From positions 186,001-250,000 of the IMG/VR virus record IMGVR_UViG_3300032240_001991: a stretch of DNA of 64,000 bases; one strand, given 5' to 3'. Positions within the stretch are counted from its first letter, which is position 1; the number at the start of each line of letters is the position of its first letter. The notes below the pieces were generated by a model, which had not been told where the DNA came from, ran no database searches, and worked only from the letters and a program-made list of their open reading frames with translations. The translations under genes and the position numbers were made by a program. Of this stretch, positions 3,808 through 42,713 are shown piece after piece.

Positions 3808-3821
3808 TCTATCTAATAACG

Positions 3822-3850
3822 GACGCCCCTTTTATGGGGCGTTCTCTTAT
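3822..3850 (+). terminator. Rho-independent terminator
   Basis: GACGCCCC-TTTTAT-GGGGCGTT followed by a T-rich tail, just after the cytochrome genes. Confidence 0.75.
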
Positions 3851-3919
3851 TTCAAATTTTGATTGCTAAAAAGATTGCATCTTTAATAAAATAGTATATA
3901 TTAGCAAAAATAAAAAAAT

Positions 3920-4014
3920 GCCCCTGTAGTTTAATGGTAGAACACCTGTTTTATACACAGGCTTTGGCGCCAGATTAGCGCACAGTGTCGGTTCGAGTCC
4001 GGCCGGGGGTACCA
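3920..4014 (+). tRNA. tRNA-Ile(UAU) with long variable arm
   Basis: Acceptor GCCCCTG/CGGGGGT + A-CCA; anticodon arm CCTGT-TTTATAC-ACAGG; ~25-nt variable region containing a GCGC/GCGC stem; T arm GTCGG-TTCGAGT-CCGGC. Confidence 0.8.
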
Positions 4015-4072: not shown

Positions 4073-4693
4073 ATGCAATCAACTAGATTAACCTGGCAAA
4101 CACAACAAGTTGGTAGGTTTATGTATCCCTATGCCTTTTGGGATAATTTTTTATCAGAAGATGAATTAAAGGCAATTGAACAGTTTTGCCTTACTAAGCC
4201 ATTAATAGATTCTATGACTATTGGCGGAGCAGAACAGGCTAACCTAACAGATGCCAGAAGATCTAAGAGTGTTATCTATGAATTTAATCCAGACATTTTC
4301 TGGATCTTTGATAGAATGAAGAGTATCACTGAGTATGTTAATTCTGAATGTTTTAACTTTGATCTATTAGGCTTTGATTATTTTCAATATGCCGAATATC
4401 AAGGGGAAGGATCACGGTATGAGTTTCATACTGATTTAATCTACGGTAACGATTTACCTCCTTATATGATATTTCCTCGAAAACTATCGTTTACTCTAGT
4501 TCTTAGTGACAATAGCGAATATACTGGTGGGGAATTACAATTTCAACCAGATACTCAAAATCCAGTTACACTTGATCAACGTAGAGGAAGAATTGTAGCA
4601 TTTCCGTCATGGGTACTGCACAGAGTATGTCCGTTAACATCAGGTACTAGAAGATCAATAGTCTGGTGGGCAACTGGACCTAAATTTAGGTAA
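4073..4693 (+). CDS. 2OG-Fe(II) oxygenase (prolyl-hydroxylase/PKHD type)
   Basis: HxD (FHTD), RKLSFTLVL..Y.GGEL, FPSWVLHRV and RRSIVWW..G motifs. Confidence 0.88.
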   Translation: MQSTRLTWQTQQVGRFMYPYAFWDNFLSEDELKAIEQFCLTKPLIDSMTIGGAEQANLTDARRSKSVIYEFNPDIFWIFDRMKSITEYVNSECFNFDLLGFDYFQYAEYQGEGSRYEFHTDLIYGNDLPPYMIFPRKLSFTLVLSDNSEYTGGELQFQPDTQNPVTLDQRRGRIVAFPSWVLHRVCPLTSGTRRSIVWWATGPKFR

Positions 4694-4699
4694 AAAATT

Positions 4700-5212
4700 A
4701 TGAGTAATCTACAGATTTTTAAAAATGTTTTACGACCAGAAACTCTAGCTGCTGTTTTAGAAGAAAGAACAAATTTCTTAGGACAACCAGTTTGGAGATG
4801 TAGCGATCATTTTTGGGGAGAAGAAATTAAAGTTGGCGTCACTGGAGTGGTTACTTCAACGATGTGCAGCCACAGAATAGGTGAAATGGTCAGAAACGAC
4901 ATATTGCACATTATGCCCCCTTGTACTACAATGGCGGTACAACATTATATGTGGCATAAGCATTCCGCAATTAGTAGTCATAATGATTGGGCGTATGCAT
5001 GGGCAGCTACAATTTACTTAAACGAAAACTGGAATTTAGATTGGGGTGGACTGTTCATGTGGCAAGATTCAGATAACGGAGAAATACACGGGCACGTTCC
5101 TGAATACAATAGCATGGCTCTTAATAAAGGCAAGGTTAATCATTTTGTTACTCCACTAAGTCCTTTAGCTCCAGAAAATAGAATTTCCTTACAAATCTGG
5201 GGTAAGGTATAA
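4700..5212 (+). CDS. 2OG-Fe(II) oxygenase
   Basis: HND, TIYLNENWNLDWGGLF, HFVTP and RISLQIW motifs. Confidence 0.8.
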   Translation: MSNLQIFKNVLRPETLAAVLEERTNFLGQPVWRCSDHFWGEEIKVGVTGVVTSTMCSHRIGEMVRNDILHIMPPCTTMAVQHYMWHKHSAISSHNDWAYAWAATIYLNENWNLDWGGLFMWQDSDNGEIHGHVPEYNSMALNKGKVNHFVTPLSPLAPENRISLQIWGKV

Positions 5213-5297
5213 ACTAGTTGACAGTTTAATAGTTTTTTGTTAAAGTACGAGCATGTTAAGACATAGTTAACATGCTCTTTAAAAAGTTTTTATTTTA

Positions 5298-5373
5298 GCT
5301 CCTTTCATCTAGAGGCCTAGGATGTTGCCCTTTCAAGGCAGGAACACGGGTTCGAATCCCGTAAGGAGCGCCA
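5298..5373 (+). tRNA. tRNA-Glu(UUC)
   Basis: Cloverleaf, loop CT-TTC-AA, CCA end. Confidence 0.93.
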
Positions 5374-5380
5374 GTTTATT

Positions 5381-5457
5381 GGCCCGTTAGCTCAATTGGT
5401 TAGAGCACTGGCCTGTCACGTCAGAGGTTACGGGTTCGAGTCCCGTACGGGTCGCCA
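5381..5457 (+). tRNA. tRNA-Asp(GUC)
   Basis: Cloverleaf, loop CT-GTC-AC, G73-CCA. Confidence 0.95.
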
Positions 5458-5463
5458 GTTTGT

Positions 5464-5539
5464 TGGAGTGTAGCTCAGCGGTAGTAGCGTTCGCCTGTTA
5501 AGCGAATGGTCATAGGTTCGAATCCTATCACTCCAGCCA
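5464..5539 (+). tRNA. tRNA-Asn(GUU)
   Basis: Cloverleaf, loop CT-GTT-AA, G73-CCA. Confidence 0.95.
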
Positions 5540-5544
5540 TTTTT

Positions 5545-5620
5545 AGTAGTGTAGCATAGTGGCTAATGCAGCACCTTCATACGGTGTCTATCATCGGTTC
5601 GAGTCCGATCACTACTACCA
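5545..5620 (+). tRNA. tRNA-CAU (elongator Met or lysidine-type Ile2)
   Basis: AGTAGTG/CACTACT acceptor with paired 1-72; loop TT-CAT-AC; CCA. Confidence 0.85.
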
Positions 5621-5625
5621 GTTTT

Positions 5626-5738
5626 AGGATGCCTACAGCAACGTAAATTACTCATGTCAAGAGAGTGGTCGCGGGTTCAATTCCCGCCTAGTCTTAGGAC
5701 TAGTAGCTCAGTTGGTAGAGCACTAAATTGTGTATCCT
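5626..5738 (+). ncRNA. AGGATGC-CTACAGCAA cassette enclosing a circularly permuted tRNA-Asp(GUC) body
   Basis: Outer stem AGGATGC/GTATCCT. Inside, the tRNA 3' half (5651-5694) precedes the 5' half (5697-5724), joined by TA; the rejoined halves give a 72-nt cloverleaf. Confidence 0.8.
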
Positions 5739-5748
5739 GTTTTATTTT

Positions 5749-5826
5749 GCACCGGTGGCGGAGTGGCCCAACGCAAGAGTCTGCAAAACTCTAAAGCCGT
5801 CAGTTCGAATCTGACCCGGTGCTCCA
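5749..5826 (+). tRNA. tRNA-Cys(GCA)
   Basis: Loop CT-GCA-AA, U73-CCA. Confidence 0.93.
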
Positions 5827-5864
5827 TTTCCTTGTATAAGTAATAAAAACTTTTTGAGGAAATT

Positions 5865-7154
5865 ATGAAAGATTATAAAATTCAAGACATTGGGCTAGCC
5901 GCGTGGGGCCATAAAGAAATTGCTATCGCAGAAACTGAAATGCCAGGATTGGTTGCTATTCGAGAAGAATATCGATCACAACAGCCACTAAAAGGTGCTA
6001 GAATTGCAGGGTCATTACATATGACTATTCAGACTGCTGTTTTAATTAAAACTCTAGTAGAACTAGGTGCCAGTGTACGCTGGTCGAGTTGTAATATCTT
6101 TTCAACGCAAGATCATGCAGCAGCCGCAGTTGCAGACTTAGGTATTCCTGTGTTTGCTTGGAAAGGCGAAACAGAAGAAGAATATTGGTGGTGCATTGAA
6201 CAGACGTTAAAAGGACCTGATGGTTGGTCGCCTAACATGATCCTCGACGACGGCCACGACCTTACTTGGTATGTAATGAATAAGTGTCCACAGCTTGTTG
6301 ATAACATTGTAGGAGTTAGTGAAGAGACCACTACAGGAATACATCGTATTATTGAAGCTATTAATAGAGGTGCGTTTCCATTCCGTGCTATTAACGTTAA
6401 CGACAGTGTAACCAAAAGTAAGTTTGATAATTTATACGGTTGTAGAGAAAGCCTAGTTGATGCAATTAAACGCGCAACTGACGTTATGATTGCAGGTAAG
6501 ACCGCAGTCGTATGTGGGTTCGGCGACGTAGGTAAAGGCTCTGCAGAAGCACTACGTGCACTTAGTGCCCAGGTTTGGGTTACTGAAGTTGATCCTATTT
6601 GCGCACTACAAGCAGCAATGGAAGGTTATCGTGTAGTTACTATGGAATATGCTGCTGATAAGGCAGACATTTTTGTAACCGCTACGGGCAATATCAATGT
6701 TATTACACACGACCATATGCAGGCAATGAAAAATAATGCTATTGTTTGCAACATTGGACATTTTGATAACGAAATTGATATTGCTGGATTAAAGAAATAT
6801 ACCTGGGAAAATATTAAACCTCAGGTAGATCATGTCATCTTCCCAAATGGCAAGCGTATTATTATACTTGCTGAAGGTCGATTAGTTAACTTAGGTTGCG
6901 CTACTGGGCACCCTAGTTATGTAATGAGTAACTCATTTACTAATCAAGTATTAGCCCAAGTTGAATTATGGACTAATTCATCTGCTTATGAAAAAGGCAA
7001 ACTTTACATATTGCCAAAACATCTAGATGAAAAGGTAGCTAGGTTGCATTTAGCACAGATAGGTGCTACAATTACTACATTAACTAAGGAACAGGCTGAA
7101 TACATCGGTGTAACAGTTGATGGTCCATTTAAGTCTGATTCTTATAGATATTAA
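5865..7154 (+). CDS. ahcY: S-adenosyl-L-homocysteine hydrolase
   Basis: [67 protein letters not shown] motifs. Confidence 0.97.
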
Positions 7155-7161
7155 AATTTGA

Positions 7162-7244
7162 GCGAGTGTGGTGGAACGGTATACACGACGGTCTTAGAAG
7201 CCGTTGCCTACGGCGTGGAGGTTCAAATCCTCTCACTCGCACCA
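7162..7244 (+). tRNA. tRNA-Leu(UAG)
   Basis: Loop CT-TAG-AA, long V arm, A73-CCA. Confidence 0.93.
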
Positions 7245-7250
7245 AGTTAT

Positions 7251-7324
7251 GCGGAGTTGGCATATGGGTTGTGCTCAAGCCTTCCAAGCTTGCTAAACGG
7301 GTTCGAGTCCCGTACTCCGCTCCA
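7251..7324 (+). tRNA. tRNA-Gly(UCC)
   Basis: Loop CT-TCC-AA, U73-CCA. Confidence 0.92.
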
Positions 7325-7333
7325 GATTTAAAT

Positions 7334-7409
7334 GGCCTCGTAGCTCAGTGGATAGAGCAGTAGCCTTCTAAGCTATTGGTCGCAGGTTCAAATCCTGCCG
7401 AGGTCGCCA
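7334..7409 (+). tRNA. tRNA-Arg(UCU)
   Basis: Loop CT-TCT-AA, CCA. Confidence 0.95.
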
Positions 7410-7423
7410 GTTATAAAAGTTTT

Positions 7424-7479
7424 AGGATGCCTACAGCAAATAAAAAATCAAACTTTGAAATTTGAAAAATGCGCATCCT
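7424..7479 (+). ncRNA. Second AGGATGC-CTACAGCAA cassette, enclosing a Gln(UUG)-anticodon-like hairpin
   Basis: Same 21-nt 5' flank (GTTTTAGGATGCCTACAGCAA) and ATCCTGTTTTATTTT 3' flank as the 5626 copy; outer stem AGGATGC/GCATCCT; inner TCAAA-CTTTGAAA-TTTGA. Confidence 0.7.
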
Positions 7480-7489
7480 GTTTTATTTT

Positions 7490-7563
7490 GCCGGATTGGT
7501 ATAATGGTATTACAGCGGTCTCCAAAACCGTTAACGGGGGTTCAATTCCCTCATCCGGTGCCA
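7490..7563 (+). tRNA. tRNA-Trp(CCA)
   Basis: Loop CT-CCA-AA, G73-CCA. Confidence 0.93.
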
Positions 7564-7583
7564 GACTTAAAAATAAATAATTT

Positions 7584-8288
7584 GTGAATAACATAATTTC
7601 AGAAGGACTAGAATATAACACCAATATTGGATTAAATTATTCTTTCTTATACATGGAAGTTCCTAAGGTATGTTGCACAGTAATTAAAAGAACCCTTCAA
7701 AAAATAGAAGGTTGCGAAAAAGATATAAGCGAAATCCCAATAAAAAGTATGACGACATTAAAAGGAATAAGCAATTCTGGAATGTCTTTTCATGATATAT
7801 TTCATTCTAAAAAATTATTTAAATTTACATTTATCAGGAATCCTTATACACGAATTTTATCTTGCTACCTTGATAAAATTCAATCAAAAAACATTGTGCC
7901 TGATTCGCAACAATATCACGAATATTACGATGCTTTAAATTTAGATTTTAATAAAGAAATTTCTTTTAAAGAATTTTTACTAGCTCTTAAAAAAGACGAA
8001 AATTTAACTAAAAATACGCATTGGACTCCGCAGTTTCTTTTAATTAAAGATTCTAGAATTTCCTATGATTTTATAGGTAGATTTGAAAATTTTGAAAATG
8101 ATTTTAAATTTGTATTAGAACAGATTGGAAAGCCAGACGCAATTATAGCAAATCATTTTCCTGAAAAAATTAGGACTAATGCTAACTTCAGGATAAAAGA
8201 ATTCTACGGAGAGACAGAAAAAGCCTTAGTTTCTGAACTTTACGAATGTGATTTTCGTAGATACAATTATTCAATAGACAGTATTTAA
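7584..8288 (+). CDS. Carbohydrate sulfotransferase (family 2)
   Basis: PAPS-binding-like VPKVCCT, FTFIRNPYTRILSCY, HWTPQ, YDFIGRFENFEND motifs. Confidence 0.85.
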   Translation: MNNIISEGLEYNTNIGLNYSFLYMEVPKVCCTVIKRTLQKIEGCEKDISEIPIKSMTTLKGISNSGMSFHDIFHSKKLFKFTFIRNPYTRILSCYLDKIQSKNIVPDSQQYHEYYDALNLDFNKEISFKEFLLALKKDENLTKNTHWTPQFLLIKDSRISYDFIGRFENFENDFKFVLEQIGKPDAIIANHFPEKIRTNANFRIKEFYGETEKALVSELYECDFRRYNYSIDSI

Positions 8289-8295
8289 AAAGTAC

Positions 8296-8324
8296 TTGAC
8301 TTTTGCATGGTAAAAGAATATAAT
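8296..8324 (+). promoter_or_regulatory. Sigma70-type promoter
   Basis: TTGACT-N17-TATAAT upstream of tRNA-Gln. Confidence 0.75.
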
Positions 8325-8335
8325 AAGTTAACAAT

Positions 8336-8409
8336 TGAGGGTTCGTCTAAAGGTAGGACCGCGGTCTTTGAAGCCGCTTATCGTGGTTCGAATCCACGAC
8401 CCTCAACCA
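8336..8409 (+). tRNA. tRNA-Gln(UUG)
   Basis: U1-A72, loop CT-TTG-AA, CCA. Confidence 0.92.
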
Positions 8410-8432
8410 AATTATTAAATAAATATGTTCAC

Positions 8433-8506
8433 GGGGATGTAAGCTAACGGGAAACTGGCGCGTTTGCATCGCGCACTTGAGGGTTCGATTCCCTCCATCT
8501 CCACCA
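8433..8506 (+). tRNA. tRNA-Ala(UGC)
   Basis: G3:U70 pair, loop TT-TGC-AT, CCA. Confidence 0.93.
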
Positions 8507-8515
8507 ATCAATTGT

Positions 8516-8589
8516 TGCGCGGTAGTAGAACGGCACTACGCTGGGCTCATAATCCGGAGAACTTGGTTCAACTCCAAGCTGCGCTACCA
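8516..8589 (+). tRNA. tRNA-Met(CAU), probably initiator
   Basis: Unpaired U1/U72, GGG run in the anticodon stem, loop CT-CAT-AA. Confidence 0.85.
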
Positions 8590-8597
8590 TTTTAATA

Positions 8598-9512
8598 ATG
8601 AAAATACTTTATACTAGACATATAGATACTAATCAAGAAAAACGAATGCAACAGGACTATCTTTGTGATGTTGTTATTCACGGCTTACGGAGTTTAGGAG
8701 AAGAAGTTATAGATGTACCAAGACTTTGGTACATGTATAAAAATGAGTTTGGTTCTGGAAAGAATAACCTAAACGATCTCTATGGAAGGGGGTTTACTAT
8801 TTTTGCAACCCTAGACGAAGATTTAATAGATCGCACAGATATAGAATTAAAAATTCGTAATCGATATTTTGATCTTATTGTTATTGCTAGAATAGATTAC
8901 GGAACACCTTATCTATCTTTAATTTTAGAAAATTATCCGCCATCAAAAATTATAATACTTGATGGACAGGATTCTGAAAAAATTTACTCTACGTATCTAA
9001 CAACTTGCGGAACTTACTTCAAAAGAGAATTAAGGTTTTCTGATCCGCATATTTTTCCAATTTCTTTTGCTTTTCCTAAAGAAAAAATTCAACAGGTAAA
9101 TTATAATAAATCTAAAATAATTTCTCAAATTAAACCAAACTATAATAGATCTTATCTATTTGATAACGAAAAAGATTATTATAATGAGTATAACGAATCT
9201 CTATTTGCTTATACACAATGTAAAGTAGGTTGGGACGTCATGAGACATTACGAAATCATGGCTTGTAGATCTATTCCTATATTTTATGGTATAGATGTCT
9301 GTCCAGAATATACTTGTACTACATTGCCAAAAAAAGAGTTGTTAGAAATTTTAAATAAACACCTTCAAGATGGGTTTGATTGGTTTACCCAAAATCTAAG
9401 TTACTGTTACGAAATGGAAGAAAAGATACATCAACATTTCTTAAAACATTGCACTACAGAAGTATTAGCAAAATATATCTTAGATACTCATTTTAGTAGA
9501 GTTAAATTATGA
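8598..9512 (+). CDS. Putative glycosyltransferase-like protein (paralog 1)
   Basis: GWDVMRHYEIMACRSIPIF C-terminal motif resembles CgeB/exostosin-like GT folds; strongly similar to the next ORF. Confidence 0.5.
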   Translation: MKILYTRHIDTNQEKRMQQDYLCDVVIHGLRSLGEEVIDVPRLWYMYKNEFGSGKNNLNDLYGRGFTIFATLDEDLIDRTDIELKIRNRYFDLIVIARIDYGTPYLSLILENYPPSKIIILDGQDSEKIYSTYLTTCGTYFKRELRFSDPHIFPISFAFPKEKIQQVNYNKSKIISQIKPNYNRSYLFDNEKDYYNEYNESLFAYTQCKVGWDVMRHYEIMACRSIPIFYGIDVCPEYTCTTLPKKELLEILNKHLQDGFDWFTQNLSYCYEMEEKIHQHFLKHCTTEVLAKYILDTHFSRVKL

Positions 9513-12855: not shown

Positions 12856-13215
12856 ATGGCTGTTTACTGGGGATATCATTTGATGCTGGATTGCTCGGGT
12901 TGCAACGATAATATAAAAGATCGTGAGCAAATTTATCGTTTTACCAAAGAATTAGTTAAGCGCATCGACATGACTGCTTTTGGCGAACCAATTATTGAAT
13001 TTTTGCTTCCTGGTGATCCAAAAGAAGGTTACAGCTTAATGCAGCTCATTACCACCAGTAATATTTGTGCACATTTTGTTAACCCTGACAATACTGCCTA
13101 CATCGATATTTTTAGTTGCAAAGATTATAATATAGAAGAAGCCAAGGCTGTAGTCTCTGAATTTTTTGCTCCAACTAAAATGAGAACTAATTACATTACC
13201 CGCAATGCTGATTAA
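12856..13215 (+). CDS. speD: S-adenosylmethionine decarboxylase proenzyme-like (pyruvoyl type)
   Basis: GYHLMLDCSGC, GYSLMQLITTSNICAHF (cleavage-site region), YIDIFSCK. Confidence 0.8.
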   Translation: MAVYWGYHLMLDCSGCNDNIKDREQIYRFTKELVKRIDMTAFGEPIIEFLLPGDPKEGYSLMQLITTSNICAHFVNPDNTAYIDIFSCKDYNIEEAKAVVSEFFAPTKMRTNYITRNAD

Positions 13216-42050: not shown

Positions 42051-42713
42051 ATGTGGGGATGGATACTACACTTTACCCCGGAAAAAATATTATCCCTGCT
42101 TGTATTTGGAATTTTTAGTTTAGGAATTTTACTAACAGTTGTTGGCTTCTTAGGAAAAAAAATTCCATTCTTATCAGCATTAATCCCTGGCGGTTCTATG
42201 GGTGTGTTAGCCGCTAAAATTTTAGGAATATTACTTTTATTTGGCGGTTCTTGGTTTAAAGGCTGTTTTGATGTAGAGATGGTTTGGCGAGATCAAGCAG
42301 CCAAAATAGAAGCAAAATTAAAAATTGCTGAATTAAAAAGTAAAGAAAAAAATATTGAGATACAAAAAGAATACATTCATGATACACAGATAGTGCATGA
42401 TGTAAAAATTGTAGTACAAGAAAAAATTAAAGAAGTTGAAAAAATTATAGATGGTAAATGCACTGTAGATCAGTCTGCTATAGATATATTAAACCAATCA
42501 GCACTTAATCTTCCACCAGATCGATCAAGCGAAGTAACGGTTCCTAAAATTTCATCAATTGAAAAATTAGAAATGCCTAATTTACCTAAAGAAAAGATTG
42601 TAGCAACTGTAGAAAATAAGATAATTACAAGACCAAAAGTAGAACCTATTTTGTTTAGAGACGAATCAGGTCCAGGTTGGGCTCGCGGAAATATAGACAG
42701 AAATAAGAGTTAA
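42051..42713 (+). CDS. Probable inner-membrane spanin (Rz-like)
   Basis: N-terminal TM helices followed by a coiled coil with Cys; adjacent to a lipoprotein gene. Confidence 0.6.
   Translation: MWGWILHFTPEKILSLLVFGIFSLGILLTVVGFLGKKIPFLSALIPGGSMGVLAAKILGILLLFGGSWFKGCFDVEMVWRDQAAKIEAKLKIAELKSKEKNIEIQKEYIHDTQIVHDVKIVVQEKIKEVEKIIDGKCTVDQSAIDILNQSALNLPPDRSSEVTVPKISSIEKLEMPNLPKEKIVATVENKIITRPKVEPILFRDESGPGWARGNIDRNKS

What the first reader, a model, noticed from the sequence alone, without database searches (positions are those of the whole stretch)
7419..7489. Repeated CTACAGCAA cassette presents anticodon-loop mimics: a modular tRNA-decoy or repair scaffold
Seen: two copies about 1.8 kb apart share GTTTTAGGATGCCTACAGCAA and ATCCTGTTTTATTTT, each sitting in a tRNA slot of the array directly before the next tRNA, but the passengers differ. 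Copy 2 holds TCAAA-CTTTGAAA-TTTGA, whose loop begins with the same CTTTGAA as the phage tRNA-Gln(UUG) loop at 8336; copy 1 holds the permuted tRNA-Asp. Established: hosts defend against phages with anticodon nucleases (PrrC, RloC, VapC-type toxins, colicin E5/D-type enzymes) that cut specific loops, and T4 counters with RNA repair. Inference: a conserved closing stem plus an unpaired CUACAGCAA motif (protein-binding or catalytic) displays swappable anticodon arms as nuclease decoys or donor pieces. I cannot assign it to a named RNA family.
Basis: partly seen in the sequence, partly recalled or inferred. Interest (0 to 1): 0.85.

Follow-up and report, generated by a model that had tools for sequence, protein, structure and literature searches.

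The report
Phage Y-like RNAs displaying tRNA mimics
The two repeated cassettes in this phage's tRNA array belong to a large, apparently undescribed family of small RNAs that pair a conserved protein-binding handle with swappable tRNA-like inserts, sit next to a Ro60-like phage protein, and share their handle with the enigmatic Class I RNAs of social amoebae.

Summary
The two cassettes are real. Exact 21-nt and 15-nt boxes lie at 5621-5641/5734-5748 and 7419-7439/7475-7489, each between two tRNA genes. They belong to a large RNA family absent from Rfam: a 7-bp terminal stem, an unpaired NW-ACAGCAA box beside its 5' strand, a variable insert, and a 3' CUGU end.

In 80 related loci, 161 of 482 [AU]CAGCAA sites carry the in-register stem, against 23 in an out-of-register control, and the stems covary. 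76 of 80 loci encoding a DUF2828/DUF7788 protein (PHROG 850) hold 1-4 such RNAs; the nearest ends about 14 nt before the start codon. The window's own phage encodes this protein elsewhere, with two more RNAs upstream. Its AlphaFold model matches Ro60/TROVE rings.

I read them as Y-RNA-like partners of a Ro60-like protein. Inserts range from anticodon-arm-like hairpins (13/79, 0.4 expected) to a whole permuted tRNA-like body (copy 1, sub-threshold YrlA hit). Neighbouring kinase and phosphatase genes suggest tRNA repair or counter-defence, but this is inferred.

The handle nearly matches Dictyostelium Class I RNAs (RF01414, 27-36 bits), which were thought unique to dictyostelids.

The parts
5545..5620 (+). 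tRNA-Met(CAU), upstream neighbour of copy 1. Its 3' processing would define the 5' side of the RNA.
   Evidence: ARAGORN; Rfam tRNA 64.1 bits
5621..5625 (+). GUUUU 5' flank shared by both copies. Many relatives have a similar (A/G)UUUU.
5626..5632 (+). Copy 1, handle helix P1, 5' strand AGGAUGC
   Evidence: Pairs with 5732-5738 (one G-U pair); MFE fold; stem covaries across the family
5633..5641 (+). Copy 1, unpaired conserved box CU-ACAGCAA
   Evidence: Exact in both copies; [AU]CAGCAA is kept in about 170 distinct relatives, though it was the search seed
5651..5665 (+). Copy 1, anticodon-arm mimic CUC-AUGUCAA-GAGAG. The loop has GUC (Asp) at the anticodon position. 5664-5665 can pair with C27 U28 at 5723-5724.
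   Evidence: Sequence; re-joined halves are called tRNA-Asp(gtc)
5666..5687 (+). Copy 1, variable loop UGGUC and T arm GCGGG-UUCAAUU-CCCGC
   Evidence: YrlA alignment; tmRNA/tRNA T-arm hits
5688..5703 (+). Copy 1, acceptor-like helix closed by a UUAG loop (CUAGUC-UUAG-GACUAG). No CCA and no free ends.
5704..5724 (+). Copy 1, U8 A9, D arm GCUC-AGUUGGUA-GAGC, A26, C27 U28
   Evidence: YrlA alignment; canonical G18 G19 read from the sequence
5732..5740 (+). Copy 1, P1 3' strand GUAUCCU plus conserved GU (the 3' ...CCUGU end)
5741..5748 (+). U-rich trailer UUUAUUUU running up to tRNA-Cys(GCA) at 5749-5826. RNase P cleavage of that tRNA would release the RNA's 3' side (inferred).
   Evidence: not scored as an intrinsic terminator
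7334..7409 (+). tRNA-Arg(UCU), upstream neighbour of copy 2
7419..7423 (+). GUUUU 5' flank of copy 2
7424..7430 (+). Copy 2, P1 5' strand AGGAUGC
   Evidence: Pairs with 7473-7479
7431..7439 (+). Copy 2, unpaired box CU-ACAGCAA
   Evidence: aligned to CUUACAGCAA of RF01414
7448..7465 (+). Copy 2, inner hairpin UCAAA-CUUUGAAA-UUUGA. It is anticodon-arm-like with UUG in an 8-nt loop. The related phage locus L019 has the same stem with the loop AUGUCAA.
7473..7481 (+). Copy 2, P1 3' strand GCAUCCU plus GU
   Evidence: 63.3 bits, whole model
7482..7489 (+). U-rich trailer up to tRNA-Trp(CCA) at 7490-7563

Best explanation
Both cassettes are genes for small stable RNAs of one modular family. They work like the Y RNAs of Ro60.

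**The constant module.** It consists of a 7-bp terminal helix with a near-invariant G2-C pair, an unpaired NW-ACAGCAA box directly after the 5' strand, and a 3' CUGU end. I infer that this handle binds a Ro60-like ring protein, DUF2828 + DUF7788 (PHROG 850). The same phage encodes that protein about 137 kb into its 327-kb contig, behind two more RNAs of the family.

**The variable module.** It is a mimic of tRNA. Copy 2 carries only an anticodon-arm-like hairpin. Copy 1 carries a complete tRNA-Asp-like L-shape whose acceptor end is closed by a loop and whose chain ends leave through the anticodon stem. This is the circular permutation seen in YrlA.

**Processing (inferred).** The RNAs are transcribed with the tRNAs. 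RNase P cleavage at the next tRNA, cleavage after the preceding CCA, and trimming back to the helix would release them.

**Function (inferred).** The RNP would present a tRNA or anticodon-arm look-alike to tRNA-directed enzymes. These could be the phage's own RNA end-healing enzymes: a P-loop kinase, a metallophosphoesterase and a DSP-type phosphatase are encoded beside the protein in most relatives. They could also be host exonucleases or anticodon nucleases. In this way the RNP would take part in tRNA repair, quality control or counter-defence during infection.

**Shown:** the family, its structure, its linkage to the protein gene, and the protein's Ro60-like fold.
**Inferred:** physical binding, processing, and the repair or counter-defence role.
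For: - **Family and structure.** A 16-mer scan of viral contigs found about 20 true relatives, each with the closing stem. In 80 loci fetched through the protein, 161 of 482 [AT]CAGCAA sites have a 7/7 in-register stem followed by G, against 23 with the 5' strand shifted by 10 nt. 160 of the 161 lie on the protein's strand. All 7 stem pairs show double changes: 49 cells, against 8.4 in shuffles.
- **Linkage to the protein.** 76 of 80 DUF2828 loci have 1-4 RNAs within 1.5 kb. Three of the other four lack upstream DNA. The nearest RNA ends a median of 14 nt before the start codon. The reverse also holds: 9 of the loci found through the RNA encode the protein.
- **The window's own phage.** The contig has the gene at L114:4001-5401. 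A promoter precedes it, followed by RNAs at L114:3811-3913 and 3927-3988.
- **Protein fold.** The AlphaFold model has pLDDT 87.5 and pTM 0.86. Its four best PDB matches are Ro60/TROVE proteins (9kop, 9l5y, 2nvo, 1yvr), with E 4e-9 to 5e-8 over about 500 columns. A sequence-profile search also hits TROVE chains. GenBank annotators call the mycobacteriophage members 'Ro-like RNA binding protein'.
- **tRNA mimicry.** YrlA hit of 49.9 bits, E 9e-11. ARAGORN calls the re-joined halves tRNA-Asp. Anticodon-like loops are enriched among small members. Other members are permuted or normal-order tRNA-like RNAs.
- **Repair context.** Metallophosphoesterase occurs in 52, DSP/PTP phosphatase in 51 and AAA_33 kinase in 43 of 84 loci. 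In the window phage's locus there is an Rv2179c-like 3'-5' exoribonuclease and a metallophosphoesterase.
- **Precedent.** Ro60 genes have Y RNAs within 4 kb on the same strand, and YrlA mimics tRNA (PMC4201824). Phage phiLo Ro60 binds two RNAs encoded upstream of its gene (PMC12135203).
Against: - There is no expression, processing or binding data for any member. The partnership rests on gene neighbourhood and analogy.
- The two copies in the window are far from the protein gene.
- The handle lacks the bulged helix and GNCGAA/CGAA motif through which canonical Y RNAs bind Ro60. Binding, if real, must therefore use a different mode.
- The RNA nearest the gene abuts its ribosome-binding site. 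It could be mainly a translational operator.
- Anticodon-like loops occur in only about one in six small members, and copy 2's loop has 8 nt.
- The stem statistics come from sequences chosen for having a stem. One search is the unbiased test.
Confidence: 0.7

Rival explanations
1. The motif is mainly a cis-acting leader, that is, a translational operator or autoregulatory site of the DUF2828 mRNA. The copies in tRNA arrays would then be titrating or vestigial duplicates, not trans-acting RNAs.
For: The proximal element ends a median of 14 nt before the start codon, directly before the Shine-Dalgarno sequence. It is always on the gene's strand.
Against: Loci usually hold 2-4 tandem copies, and some lie downstream of the gene. 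Copies sit inside tRNA arrays far from the gene, as in the window. Inserts are elaborate tRNA-like bodies that an operator would not need. Ro60 and Y RNA genes show the same arrangement, and there the RNA acts in trans (PMC4201824, PMC12135203). The two roles are not exclusive.
Confidence: 0.12
2. The cassettes are free-standing decoys or donor pieces. They display anticodon loops to host anticodon nucleases by themselves, and CUACAGCAA is a catalytic or nuclease-binding element without a dedicated phage protein.
For: Anticodon-like loops are enriched. The displayed triplets include GUC, GUU, GUA, UUU and UUG. From memory, these are anticodons targeted by colicin E5, PrrC/PARIS-type and gamma-toxin-type nucleases. 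The location in tRNA arrays also fits.
Against: The handle co-occurs almost perfectly with one protein family. Many members lack any anticodon-like loop. No known ribozyme matched.
Confidence: 0.1
3. Copy 1 is a true circularly permuted tRNA gene that matures into a working tRNA-Asp. Copy 2 is a decayed relic of such a gene.
For: The 3' half precedes the 5' half, and the re-joined halves score as tRNA-Asp(gtc). Relatives L020, L023 and L134 encode NCCA plus a linker between the halves.
Against: In copy 1 the acceptor helix is closed by 4 nt, with no discriminator or CCA. The break lies inside the anticodon stem and continues into a conserved handle shared with non-tRNA inserts. The phage already has a normal tRNA-Asp(GUC) at 5381-5457. 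No bulge-helix-bulge motif is evident by eye, though none was formally searched for. From memory, bacteria lack the splicing endonuclease that matures permuted tRNAs.
Confidence: 0.03
4. The repeat is punctuation of the tRNA operon: a processing site, weak terminator or spacer hairpin. Alternatively it is a miniature mobile element with 7-bp inverted ends.
For: The stem is followed by a U-rich tract in the window. The two copies have identical ends.
Against: The terminator scan does not call it, and tRNAs follow with no promoter in between. Relatives have different 3' flanks. The stems covary rather than being conserved in sequence, and orientation is fixed relative to a protein gene. No target-site duplications were noted.
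Confidence: 0.03

Closest known systems
Bacterial and phage Y RNAs of Ro60/Rsr, especially YrlA (Rfam RF02553; Chen et al. 2014, PMC4201824; phiLo Yrl1/2, PMC12135203)
   Same: - They are small RNAs encoded next to a ring-shaped TROVE+vWA protein, on the same strand and often in tandem.
- Both are modular: a terminal helix that serves as the protein handle, plus an effector module that mimics tRNA.
- Copy 1 has the YrlA topology (T arm, closed acceptor hairpin, D arm) and aligns to RF02553 over the full model.
- The genomic context is RNA repair and exonuclease genes.
   Different: - The handle is a perfect 7-bp helix plus a single-stranded ACAGCAA box and a CUGU end. It is not a bulged helix with GNCGAA/CGAA.
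- The protein belongs to Pfam DUF2828/DUF7788, not Pfam TROVE. Sequence identity to Ro60 is 13-17% in the structural alignment.
- The YrlA score is below Rfam's threshold (49.9 against 69 bits).
- Most members have no tRNA-like body at all.
Class I RNAs of Dictyostelia (Rfam RF01414; Kjellin et al. 2021, PMC7919456)
   Same: - Length is about 42-65 nt.
- A short covarying helix joins the 5' and 3' ends, with a conserved 5' G paired to the C of a conserved 3' CUGU.
- An unpaired (C)CUUACAGCAA box lies directly after the 5' strand, where the phage RNAs have NW-ACAGCAA.
- The interior is variable and A/U-rich, with an A-rich run before the 3' strand.
- RF01414 aligns end to end to seven phage RNAs at 26.7-36.0 bits.
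- A giant-virus contig carries the exact CCUUACAGCAA.
   Different: - The scores are below Rfam's gathering score of 41.5 bits.
- The spacing between helix and ACAGCAA is 2 nt in phages and 3 nt in Dictyostelium.
- Class I RNAs have their own DUSE promoter and are nuclear-encoded.
- Their known direct binder is the RRM protein Rnp1A/CIBP, and no tRNA-like inserts are reported.
- I could not establish whether dictyostelids have a DUF2828 protein.
Circularly permuted tRNA genes (red alga Cyanidioschyzon merolae, Thermofilum; from memory, not tested)
   Same: The 3' half of a tRNA is encoded before the 5' half. In some relatives (L020, L023, L134) an encoded CCA and a linker lie between the halves.
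   Different: In the window copy the acceptor end is sealed. The break continues into a conserved non-tRNA handle. Nothing indicates maturation into a decoding tRNA.
Stable RNAs C and D (species 1 and 2) of the phage T4 tRNA cluster (from memory, not tested)
   Same: They are small stable RNAs of unknown function, encoded among phage tRNA genes and released by tRNA-processing enzymes.
   Different: No sequence comparison was made here. T4 did not appear among the listed DUF2828-bearing phages.

Membership tests
YrlA / bacterial Y RNA (RF02553) | Score at or above Rfam's gathering threshold (69 bits) | tested here: not met
   Copy 1 scores 49.9 bits, E 9e-11, over the full-length model. Copy 2 has no hit. 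There is no hit at gathering level in the window.
YrlA / bacterial Y RNA (RF02553) | tRNA-like module in the order T arm, closed acceptor-like hairpin, D arm | tested here: met
   Met for copy 1 only: 5671-5687, 5688-5703 and 5706-5721. Copy 2 has only a hairpin.
YrlA / bacterial Y RNA (RF02553) | Ro60-binding handle: a bulged helix with the GNCGAA(N)G / GGUCCGA-type motif | tested here: not met
   The handle is AGGAUGC/G(C/U)AUCCU with unpaired CUACAGCAA and no GNCGAA. The YrlA model's outer helices align with non-standard pairs.
YrlA / bacterial Y RNA (RF02553) | Encoded near a Ro60 (Pfam TROVE) gene on the same strand | tested here: inconclusive
   Relatives lie next to a DUF2828/DUF7788 gene on the same strand. 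That protein has a Ro60-like fold but is not a Pfam TROVE member. The window copies themselves are distant from the gene.
Dictyostelium Class I RNA (RF01414) | Score at or above Rfam's gathering threshold (41.5 bits) | tested here: not met
   Copy 2 scores 27.5 bits. Relatives score 26.7-36.0 bits, all over the full-length model.
Dictyostelium Class I RNA (RF01414) | A 42-65 nt RNA whose ends form a short covarying helix, with a 5' G paired to the C of a 3' CUGU | tested here: met
   Copy 2 core is 7425-7481, 57 nt, G...CUGU. Covariation is shown.
Dictyostelium Class I RNA (RF01414) | The 11-nt CCUUACAGCAA motif adjacent to the 5' strand of the helix | tested here: inconclusive
   The window has CCU-ACAGCAA, one U short. 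The positions C6, C9, A10 and A11 that Kjellin et al. find invariant are kept. Exact CUUACAGCAA occurs in L087 and L022, and exact CCUUACAGCAA in the giant-virus locus L056.
Dictyostelium Class I RNA (RF01414) | DUSE promoter about 60 nt upstream; dictyostelid nuclear gene; binds Rnp1A/CIBP | not testable with these tools
   Here the context is a phage with sigma-70-type promoters and a tRNA operon. Protein binding was not assayed.
Circularly permuted tRNA gene | 3' half before 5' half, with ends that can be processed to a mature acceptor stem with CCA | tested here: not met
   The order is permuted. However, the acceptor helix is closed by UUAG, with no discriminator or CCA.
Intrinsic terminator / processing hairpin | A short G+C-rich hairpin with a 3-8 nt loop followed directly by a U tract | tested here: not met
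   Not reported by the terminator scan of 5100-8700. The stem encloses 42-99 nt.

The most novel reading that the evidence does not exclude
The phage and giant-virus RNAs and the Class I RNAs of Dictyostelium may be one RNA family, or two that converged on one protein fold. The shared handle would be the binding site for DUF2828-type Ro60-like proteins. If so, Class I RNAs are not an invention of social amoebae tied to multicellularity. They would be the amoebal branch of a second, widespread 'Y RNA world'. Their unexplained pull-down partner DDB_G0281243, or another dictyostelid protein, would be predicted to be a DUF2828 protein. In phages the same handle would carry exchangeable tRNA or anticodon-arm mimics.
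Probability: 0.45. Interest if true: 0.92.

Novelty: new variant of a known kind. Interest (0 to 1): 0.85.

Why it matters
- **It gives a function to a common phage protein.** The protein family (PHROG 850 / DUF2828) occurs in at least 709 sequenced phages. These include phages of E. coli, Salmonella, Listeria, Staphylococcus, Enterococcus, Campylobacter, Vibrio and Mycobacterium, and more than 580 metagenomic viral contigs. It is annotated only as 'hypothetical' or 'RNA-binding'. An RNA partner with a defined handle would explain what it binds.
- **It would explain unannotated gaps in phage tRNA arrays.** Some of the genes there appear to be misannotated, such as the 'tRNA-Asn' of mycobacteriophage Wilder and a 'hypothetical protein' of phiSUSP1.
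- **It extends the Ro60-Y RNA principle.** A ring protein plus a modular RNA adaptor that mimics tRNA would now cover a second protein family with a different recognition code.
- **It makes phage tRNA repair and anticodon-nuclease counter-defence testable** in model phages that grow on E. coli MG1655 or M. smegmatis.
- **It bears on a 20-year-old puzzle.** The near-identity of the handle with Dictyostelium Class I RNAs offers the first lead outside dictyostelids on what those abundant RNAs bind and do.

Tried and rejected
- **Rfam at gathering thresholds** found only tRNAs in the window. In 15 related loci it found only tRNAs, a tmRNA and a Polynucleobacter-1 RNA. The family is therefore not in Rfam 15.
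- **BLASTN of 5200-8600 against 50,697 phage records** found only tRNA and ahcY similarity and no close relative.
- **Terminator reading:** rejected.
- **ACAG of the box pairing with the 3' CUGU.** I inspected the sequences listed. Members with UCAGCAA mostly keep CUGU, and members ending CUGA mostly keep ACAGCAA. There is no covariation, so I dropped the idea.
- **Identifying DDB_G0281243 or any dictyostelid DUF2828 protein.** I tried a text search, the preprint text, a homology search seeded with the giant-virus protein, cluster look-ups and two searches of the paper's supplements. None gave organism names or the sequence, so this stays unresolved.
- **Avesson et al. 2011 and Burroughs & Aravind 2016** are not held in the library. 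I could not check whether the latter discusses this protein family.
- **Scan of bacterial and archaeal genomes.** With the 5-sequence alignment it found only 22 loci, mostly MAG contigs. This fits a mainly viral distribution, but the peptide patterns reach only close relatives.
- **Joint alignment with Dictyostelium sequences.** I did not type them into an alignment or model, to respect the rule on pasted sequence. The comparison rests on RF01414 scores and on reading.
Full report
**1.

The window is part of a tRNA-rich jumbo-phage contig, IMGVR_UViG_3300032240_001991, 326,658 bp. It carries 20 tRNA genes that encode their CCA ends.

The two cassettes share exact boxes:
- GTTTTAGGATGCCTACAGCAA at 5621-5641 and 7419-7439
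- ATCCTGTTTTATTTT at 5734-5748 and 7475-7489

No further copy appears even with three mismatches allowed. Copy 1 fills the gap between tRNA-Met and tRNA-Cys. Copy 2 fills the gap between tRNA-Arg and tRNA-Trp.

In both copies AGGAUGC pairs with G(U/C)AUCCU to close the element. Copy 2 encloses a 5-bp hairpin with the loop CUUUGAAA. Copy 1 encloses, in order:
- an anticodon-arm-like hairpin with loop AUGUCAA
- a canonical T arm
- an acceptor-like helix sealed by UUAG
- U8 A9 and a canonical D arm with G18 G19

Re-joining the two halves gives a sequence that ARAGORN calls tRNA-Asp(gtc).

**2. It is a large family with a covarying handle**

An exact-word scan of 2.9 million viral contigs returned 83 hits. 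About 20 of them had the matching 3' strand within 200 nt. The rest were coding-sequence coincidences.

All true hits share this plan: a 7-bp helix, CU, ACAGCAA, a variable insert, the 3' strand, then GU. Four of them sit directly before an ORF that Pfam assigns to DUF2828 + DUF7788. tblastn found that protein in nine of the RNA-derived loci.

I then fetched 80 loci through the protein and scanned them for the box plus an in-register helix. The scan found the RNA with many different helices: AGGAUCG/CGAUCCU, AGAAUGU/ACAUUCU, AGGUUAU/AUAACCU, AGUUUAG/CUAAACU, UGUAUAC/GUAUACA and others.

An ascertainment-free test gave a clear result. Of 482 [AT]CAGCAA sites in these loci, 161 have a perfect 7-bp partner followed by G in the right register. 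Only 23 do when the 5' strand is taken 10 nt upstream. 160 of the 161 are on the protein's strand.

In an alignment of 34 small members, all seven pairs show double changes: 49 cells, against 8.4 in shuffles. Slid registers collapse to 34-44% pairing. Because these 34 sequences were chosen for having a stem, one search is the fair test.

The box varies only at its first position (A or U) and rarely at the third. The G2-C pair and the G after the helix are nearly constant. The end usually reads CUGU.

**3. The partner is a Ro60-like protein, and the window's phage has it**

76 of 80 protein loci carry 1-4 RNAs within 1.5 kb: 143 upstream and 20 downstream. Three of the four exceptions have no upstream DNA in the contig. 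The proximal RNA ends a median of 14 nt before the start codon.

One fetched locus, L114, comes from the window's own contig at 133,335-142,729. Reading along it:
- a TTGACA/TATACT promoter
- an RNA at 3811-3913 (AGGAUAG GU UCAGCAA ... CUAUCCU GU)
- a second RNA at 3927-3988 (AGGUUAA GU UCCGCAA ... UUAACCU GU)
- AAGGAG, then the ATG of the DUF2828/DUF7788 gene at 4001

The 64-kb window itself does not encode the protein.

An AlphaFold2 model of this protein, built from a 44-sequence alignment, has pLDDT 87.5 and pTM 0.86. Its four best PDB matches are the only Ro60/TROVE structures in the list: Thermus phage phiLo Ro60 (9kop, 9l5y), Deinococcus Rsr (2nvo) and Xenopus Ro (1yvr). E-values are 4e-9 to 5e-8, about 500 columns are aligned, and TM-scores are 0.45-0.61. 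Next come isolated vWA domains. A sequence-profile search also touches the TROVE chains.

PHROGs files the family as PHROG 850, 'RNA-binding protein'. GenBank annotators of mycobacteriophages call it 'Ro-like RNA binding protein'.

The neighbours of the gene are RNA-end enzymes. Calcineurin-like metallophosphoesterase is present in 52 of 84 loci, a DSP/PTP-type phosphatase in 51, and an AAA_33 P-loop kinase in 43. In the window phage's locus there is an Rv2179c-like 3'-5' exoribonuclease two genes upstream and a metallophosphoesterase downstream.

**4. What the inserts are**

Of 79 small members (72 nt or less):
- 60 have an inner hairpin of at least 4 bp (shuffles 28 ± 4)
- 13 have a 7-nt loop of the anticodon pattern N-U-NNN-R-N (shuffles 0.37)
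- 10 have Y-U-NNN-A-A (shuffles 0.035)

Examples are CUGUAAA, CUUGUAA, CUCGUAA, CUUUUAA, CUGUUAA, CUCAUAA and AUGUCAA. The last is the copy-2 counterpart in the related jumbo phage L019. It keeps the window's stem but changes the loop.

Among 93 larger members, a motif screen found both a T loop and a D loop in nine. Six are in the permuted T-before-D order of copy 1. Three are in normal order, one of which (L022:7094-7307) merely spans a real tRNA-Leu. In the other two the handle replaces the acceptor stem.

More tRNA-like members turned up in bacterial MAG contigs, in E. coli phage phiSUSP1 and in mycobacteriophage Wilder. Some relatives (L020, L023, L134) encode NCCA and a 7-55 nt linker between the halves instead of a sealed loop.

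The most common large class, about 160 nt, has no recognisable tRNA features and no Rfam hit.

**5. Comparison with known families**

*YrlA.* Rfam's YrlA model aligns to copy 1 over all 114 positions (49.9 bits, E 9e-11, threshold 69). The T arm, closed acceptor hairpin and D arm match. The outer Ro60-binding helices do not. Chen et al. define the YrlA handle by GNCGAA(N)G and searched only genomes with annotated TROVE proteins. The phiLo study used a CGAA motif. Neither mentions ACAGCAA or DUF2828. The term DUF2828 occurs in only five unrelated papers.

*Dictyostelium Class I RNA.* Rfam's model aligns end to end to copy 2 at 27.5 bits. It also aligns to six relatives at 26.7-36.0 bits. The printed E-values are already multiplied by 4227 families. 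Every one of these hits coincides with an independently defined element.

The published description fits point by point (and the sequences):
- length 42-65 nt
- a short covarying helix joining the ends
- an invariant 5' G paired with the C of a conserved 3' CUGU
- the unpaired CCUUACAGCAA directly after the 5' strand, with C6, C9, A10 and A11 most conserved
- a variable interior

The differences are one nucleotide of spacing, the promoter, and the host. [quoted passage not shown]

A contig from a giant-virus MAG (L056) offers a bridge. It has a DUF2828/DUF7788 gene of anomalous G+C. It also has at least four tandem handle RNAs, one with the exact CCUUACAGCAA. Its other genes include a family-11 fucosyltransferase and a Nab2-type zinc-finger protein.

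The DdR-21 pull-down recovered Rnp1A/CIBP, GuaB, NdkC and DDB_G0281243, a protein of unknown function. I could not find out what DDB_G0281243 is.

**6. Mechanism**

*Shown:*
- a conserved, covarying handle
- modular inserts biased towards tRNA and anticodon-arm mimicry
- tight linkage to a Ro60-fold protein and to RNA end-healing genes
- residence in tRNA operons

*Inferred by analogy with Rsr-YrlA and phiLo Ro60-Yrl:*
- The RNAs are cut out with the tRNAs.
- They bind the ring protein through the handle.
- They use the tRNA-like module to engage tRNA-directed enzymes.

I favour a role in tRNA repair, surveillance or counter-defence during infection. A pure decoy role and an additional autoregulatory role for the RBS-proximal copy both remain open.

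The terminator, mobile-element and true permuted-tRNA readings fit poorly (section 2; the sealed acceptor helix; the normal tRNA-Asp at 5381-5457).

**7. Distribution and tractable models**

The protein occurs in more than 583 viral contigs and in 709 GenBank phage records. These include Ounavirinae of E. coli and Salmonella, and phages of Listeria, Staphylococcus, Enterococcus, Campylobacter, Vibrio, Aeromonas, Sinorhizobium, Synechococcus and Mycobacterium.

In phiSUSP1 (host E. coli MG1655) four handle RNAs lie among the tRNAs just downstream of the gene. Their helix is AGACCNN/NNGGUCU, and one is tRNA-like.

In mycobacteriophage Wilder three RNAs follow the 'Ro-like' gene. The middle one is a permuted tRNA-like RNA that GenBank annotates as tRNA-Asn, although ARAGORN finds no tRNA there.

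**8. Verdict**

It lacks the key facts, namely the Ro60-like partner and the kinship with YrlA-type and Class I RNAs.

I found no prior description of this RNA family or of its link to DUF2828 in Rfam 15 or in the searchable literature. Two relevant papers could not be read.

Noticed in passing
window 3920-4014; also L015:3629-3719 (-), L020:11309-11404, L052:1547-1640: The phage tRNA-Ile(UAU) is 91-96 nt long because of a long extra arm. The stem of that arm covaries between phages and its loop keeps AGAU. This is unusual for tRNA-Ile, which normally has a short variable loop.
   Followed up: partly
L187:4033-4158 (Mycobacterium phage Wilder, KX580962.1 about 42058-42183): The GenBank feature 'tRNA-Asn' (SEA_WILDER_56) lies inside a permuted tRNA-like handle RNA (UGGACUC CU ACAGCAA ... 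GAGUCCA GU). ARAGORN finds no tRNA there, so the annotation is probably wrong.
   Followed up: partly
L186:4829-4999 (Escherichia phage phiSUSP1, protein ALH47023.1): An annotated 'hypothetical protein' CDS overlaps a handle RNA at L186:4876-4934 in the tRNA array. It is probably not a protein gene.
   Followed up: no
L061:256-2657, with the inserted ORF at L061:1457-2179 (+): The DUF2828 gene of this phage is split into two pieces by about 900 bp. The insert carries, on the opposite strand, an ORF whose N-terminal sequence looks GIY-YIG-like by eye; no domain search was run. It may be a homing endonuclease or intron-type insertion.
   Followed up: no
e.g. L108:3552-3715, L109:905-1069, L157:3770-3925: The most common large class of handle RNAs, about 155-166 nt, has a conserved structured insert with no tRNA motifs and no Rfam match. 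What it mimics is unknown.
   Followed up: no
L056:8423-8772 (-) and L056:6482-8203 (+): A giant-virus MAG contig carries at least four tandem handle RNAs next to a DUF2828/DUF7788 gene. The gene's G+C is 0.50-0.63 in a background of 0.35, which suggests recent acquisition.
   Followed up: partly
L020:389-512, L023:3867-4003, L134:3506-3675: In these relatives the permuted tRNA-like insert has an encoded NCCA and a 7-55 nt linker instead of a sealed acceptor loop. If RNase P and a 3' nuclease cut there, the result would be a two-piece tRNA-like RNA with a free CCA end, held together by the handle.
   Followed up: no
L022:4687-4748: A sub-threshold match to the freshwater-1 RNA motif (59 bits, threshold 72) lies inside another phage tRNA array.
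   Followed up: no
window 5865-7154, 12856-13215, 4073-5212, 7584-8288: The tRNA blocks are interleaved with auxiliary metabolic genes. These are S-adenosylhomocysteine hydrolase (identified by eye from the translation and from annotated ahcY BLASTN hits), and, by Pfam, SAM decarboxylase, two 2OG-Fe(II) oxygenases, a sulfotransferase and methyltransferases.
   Followed up: partly
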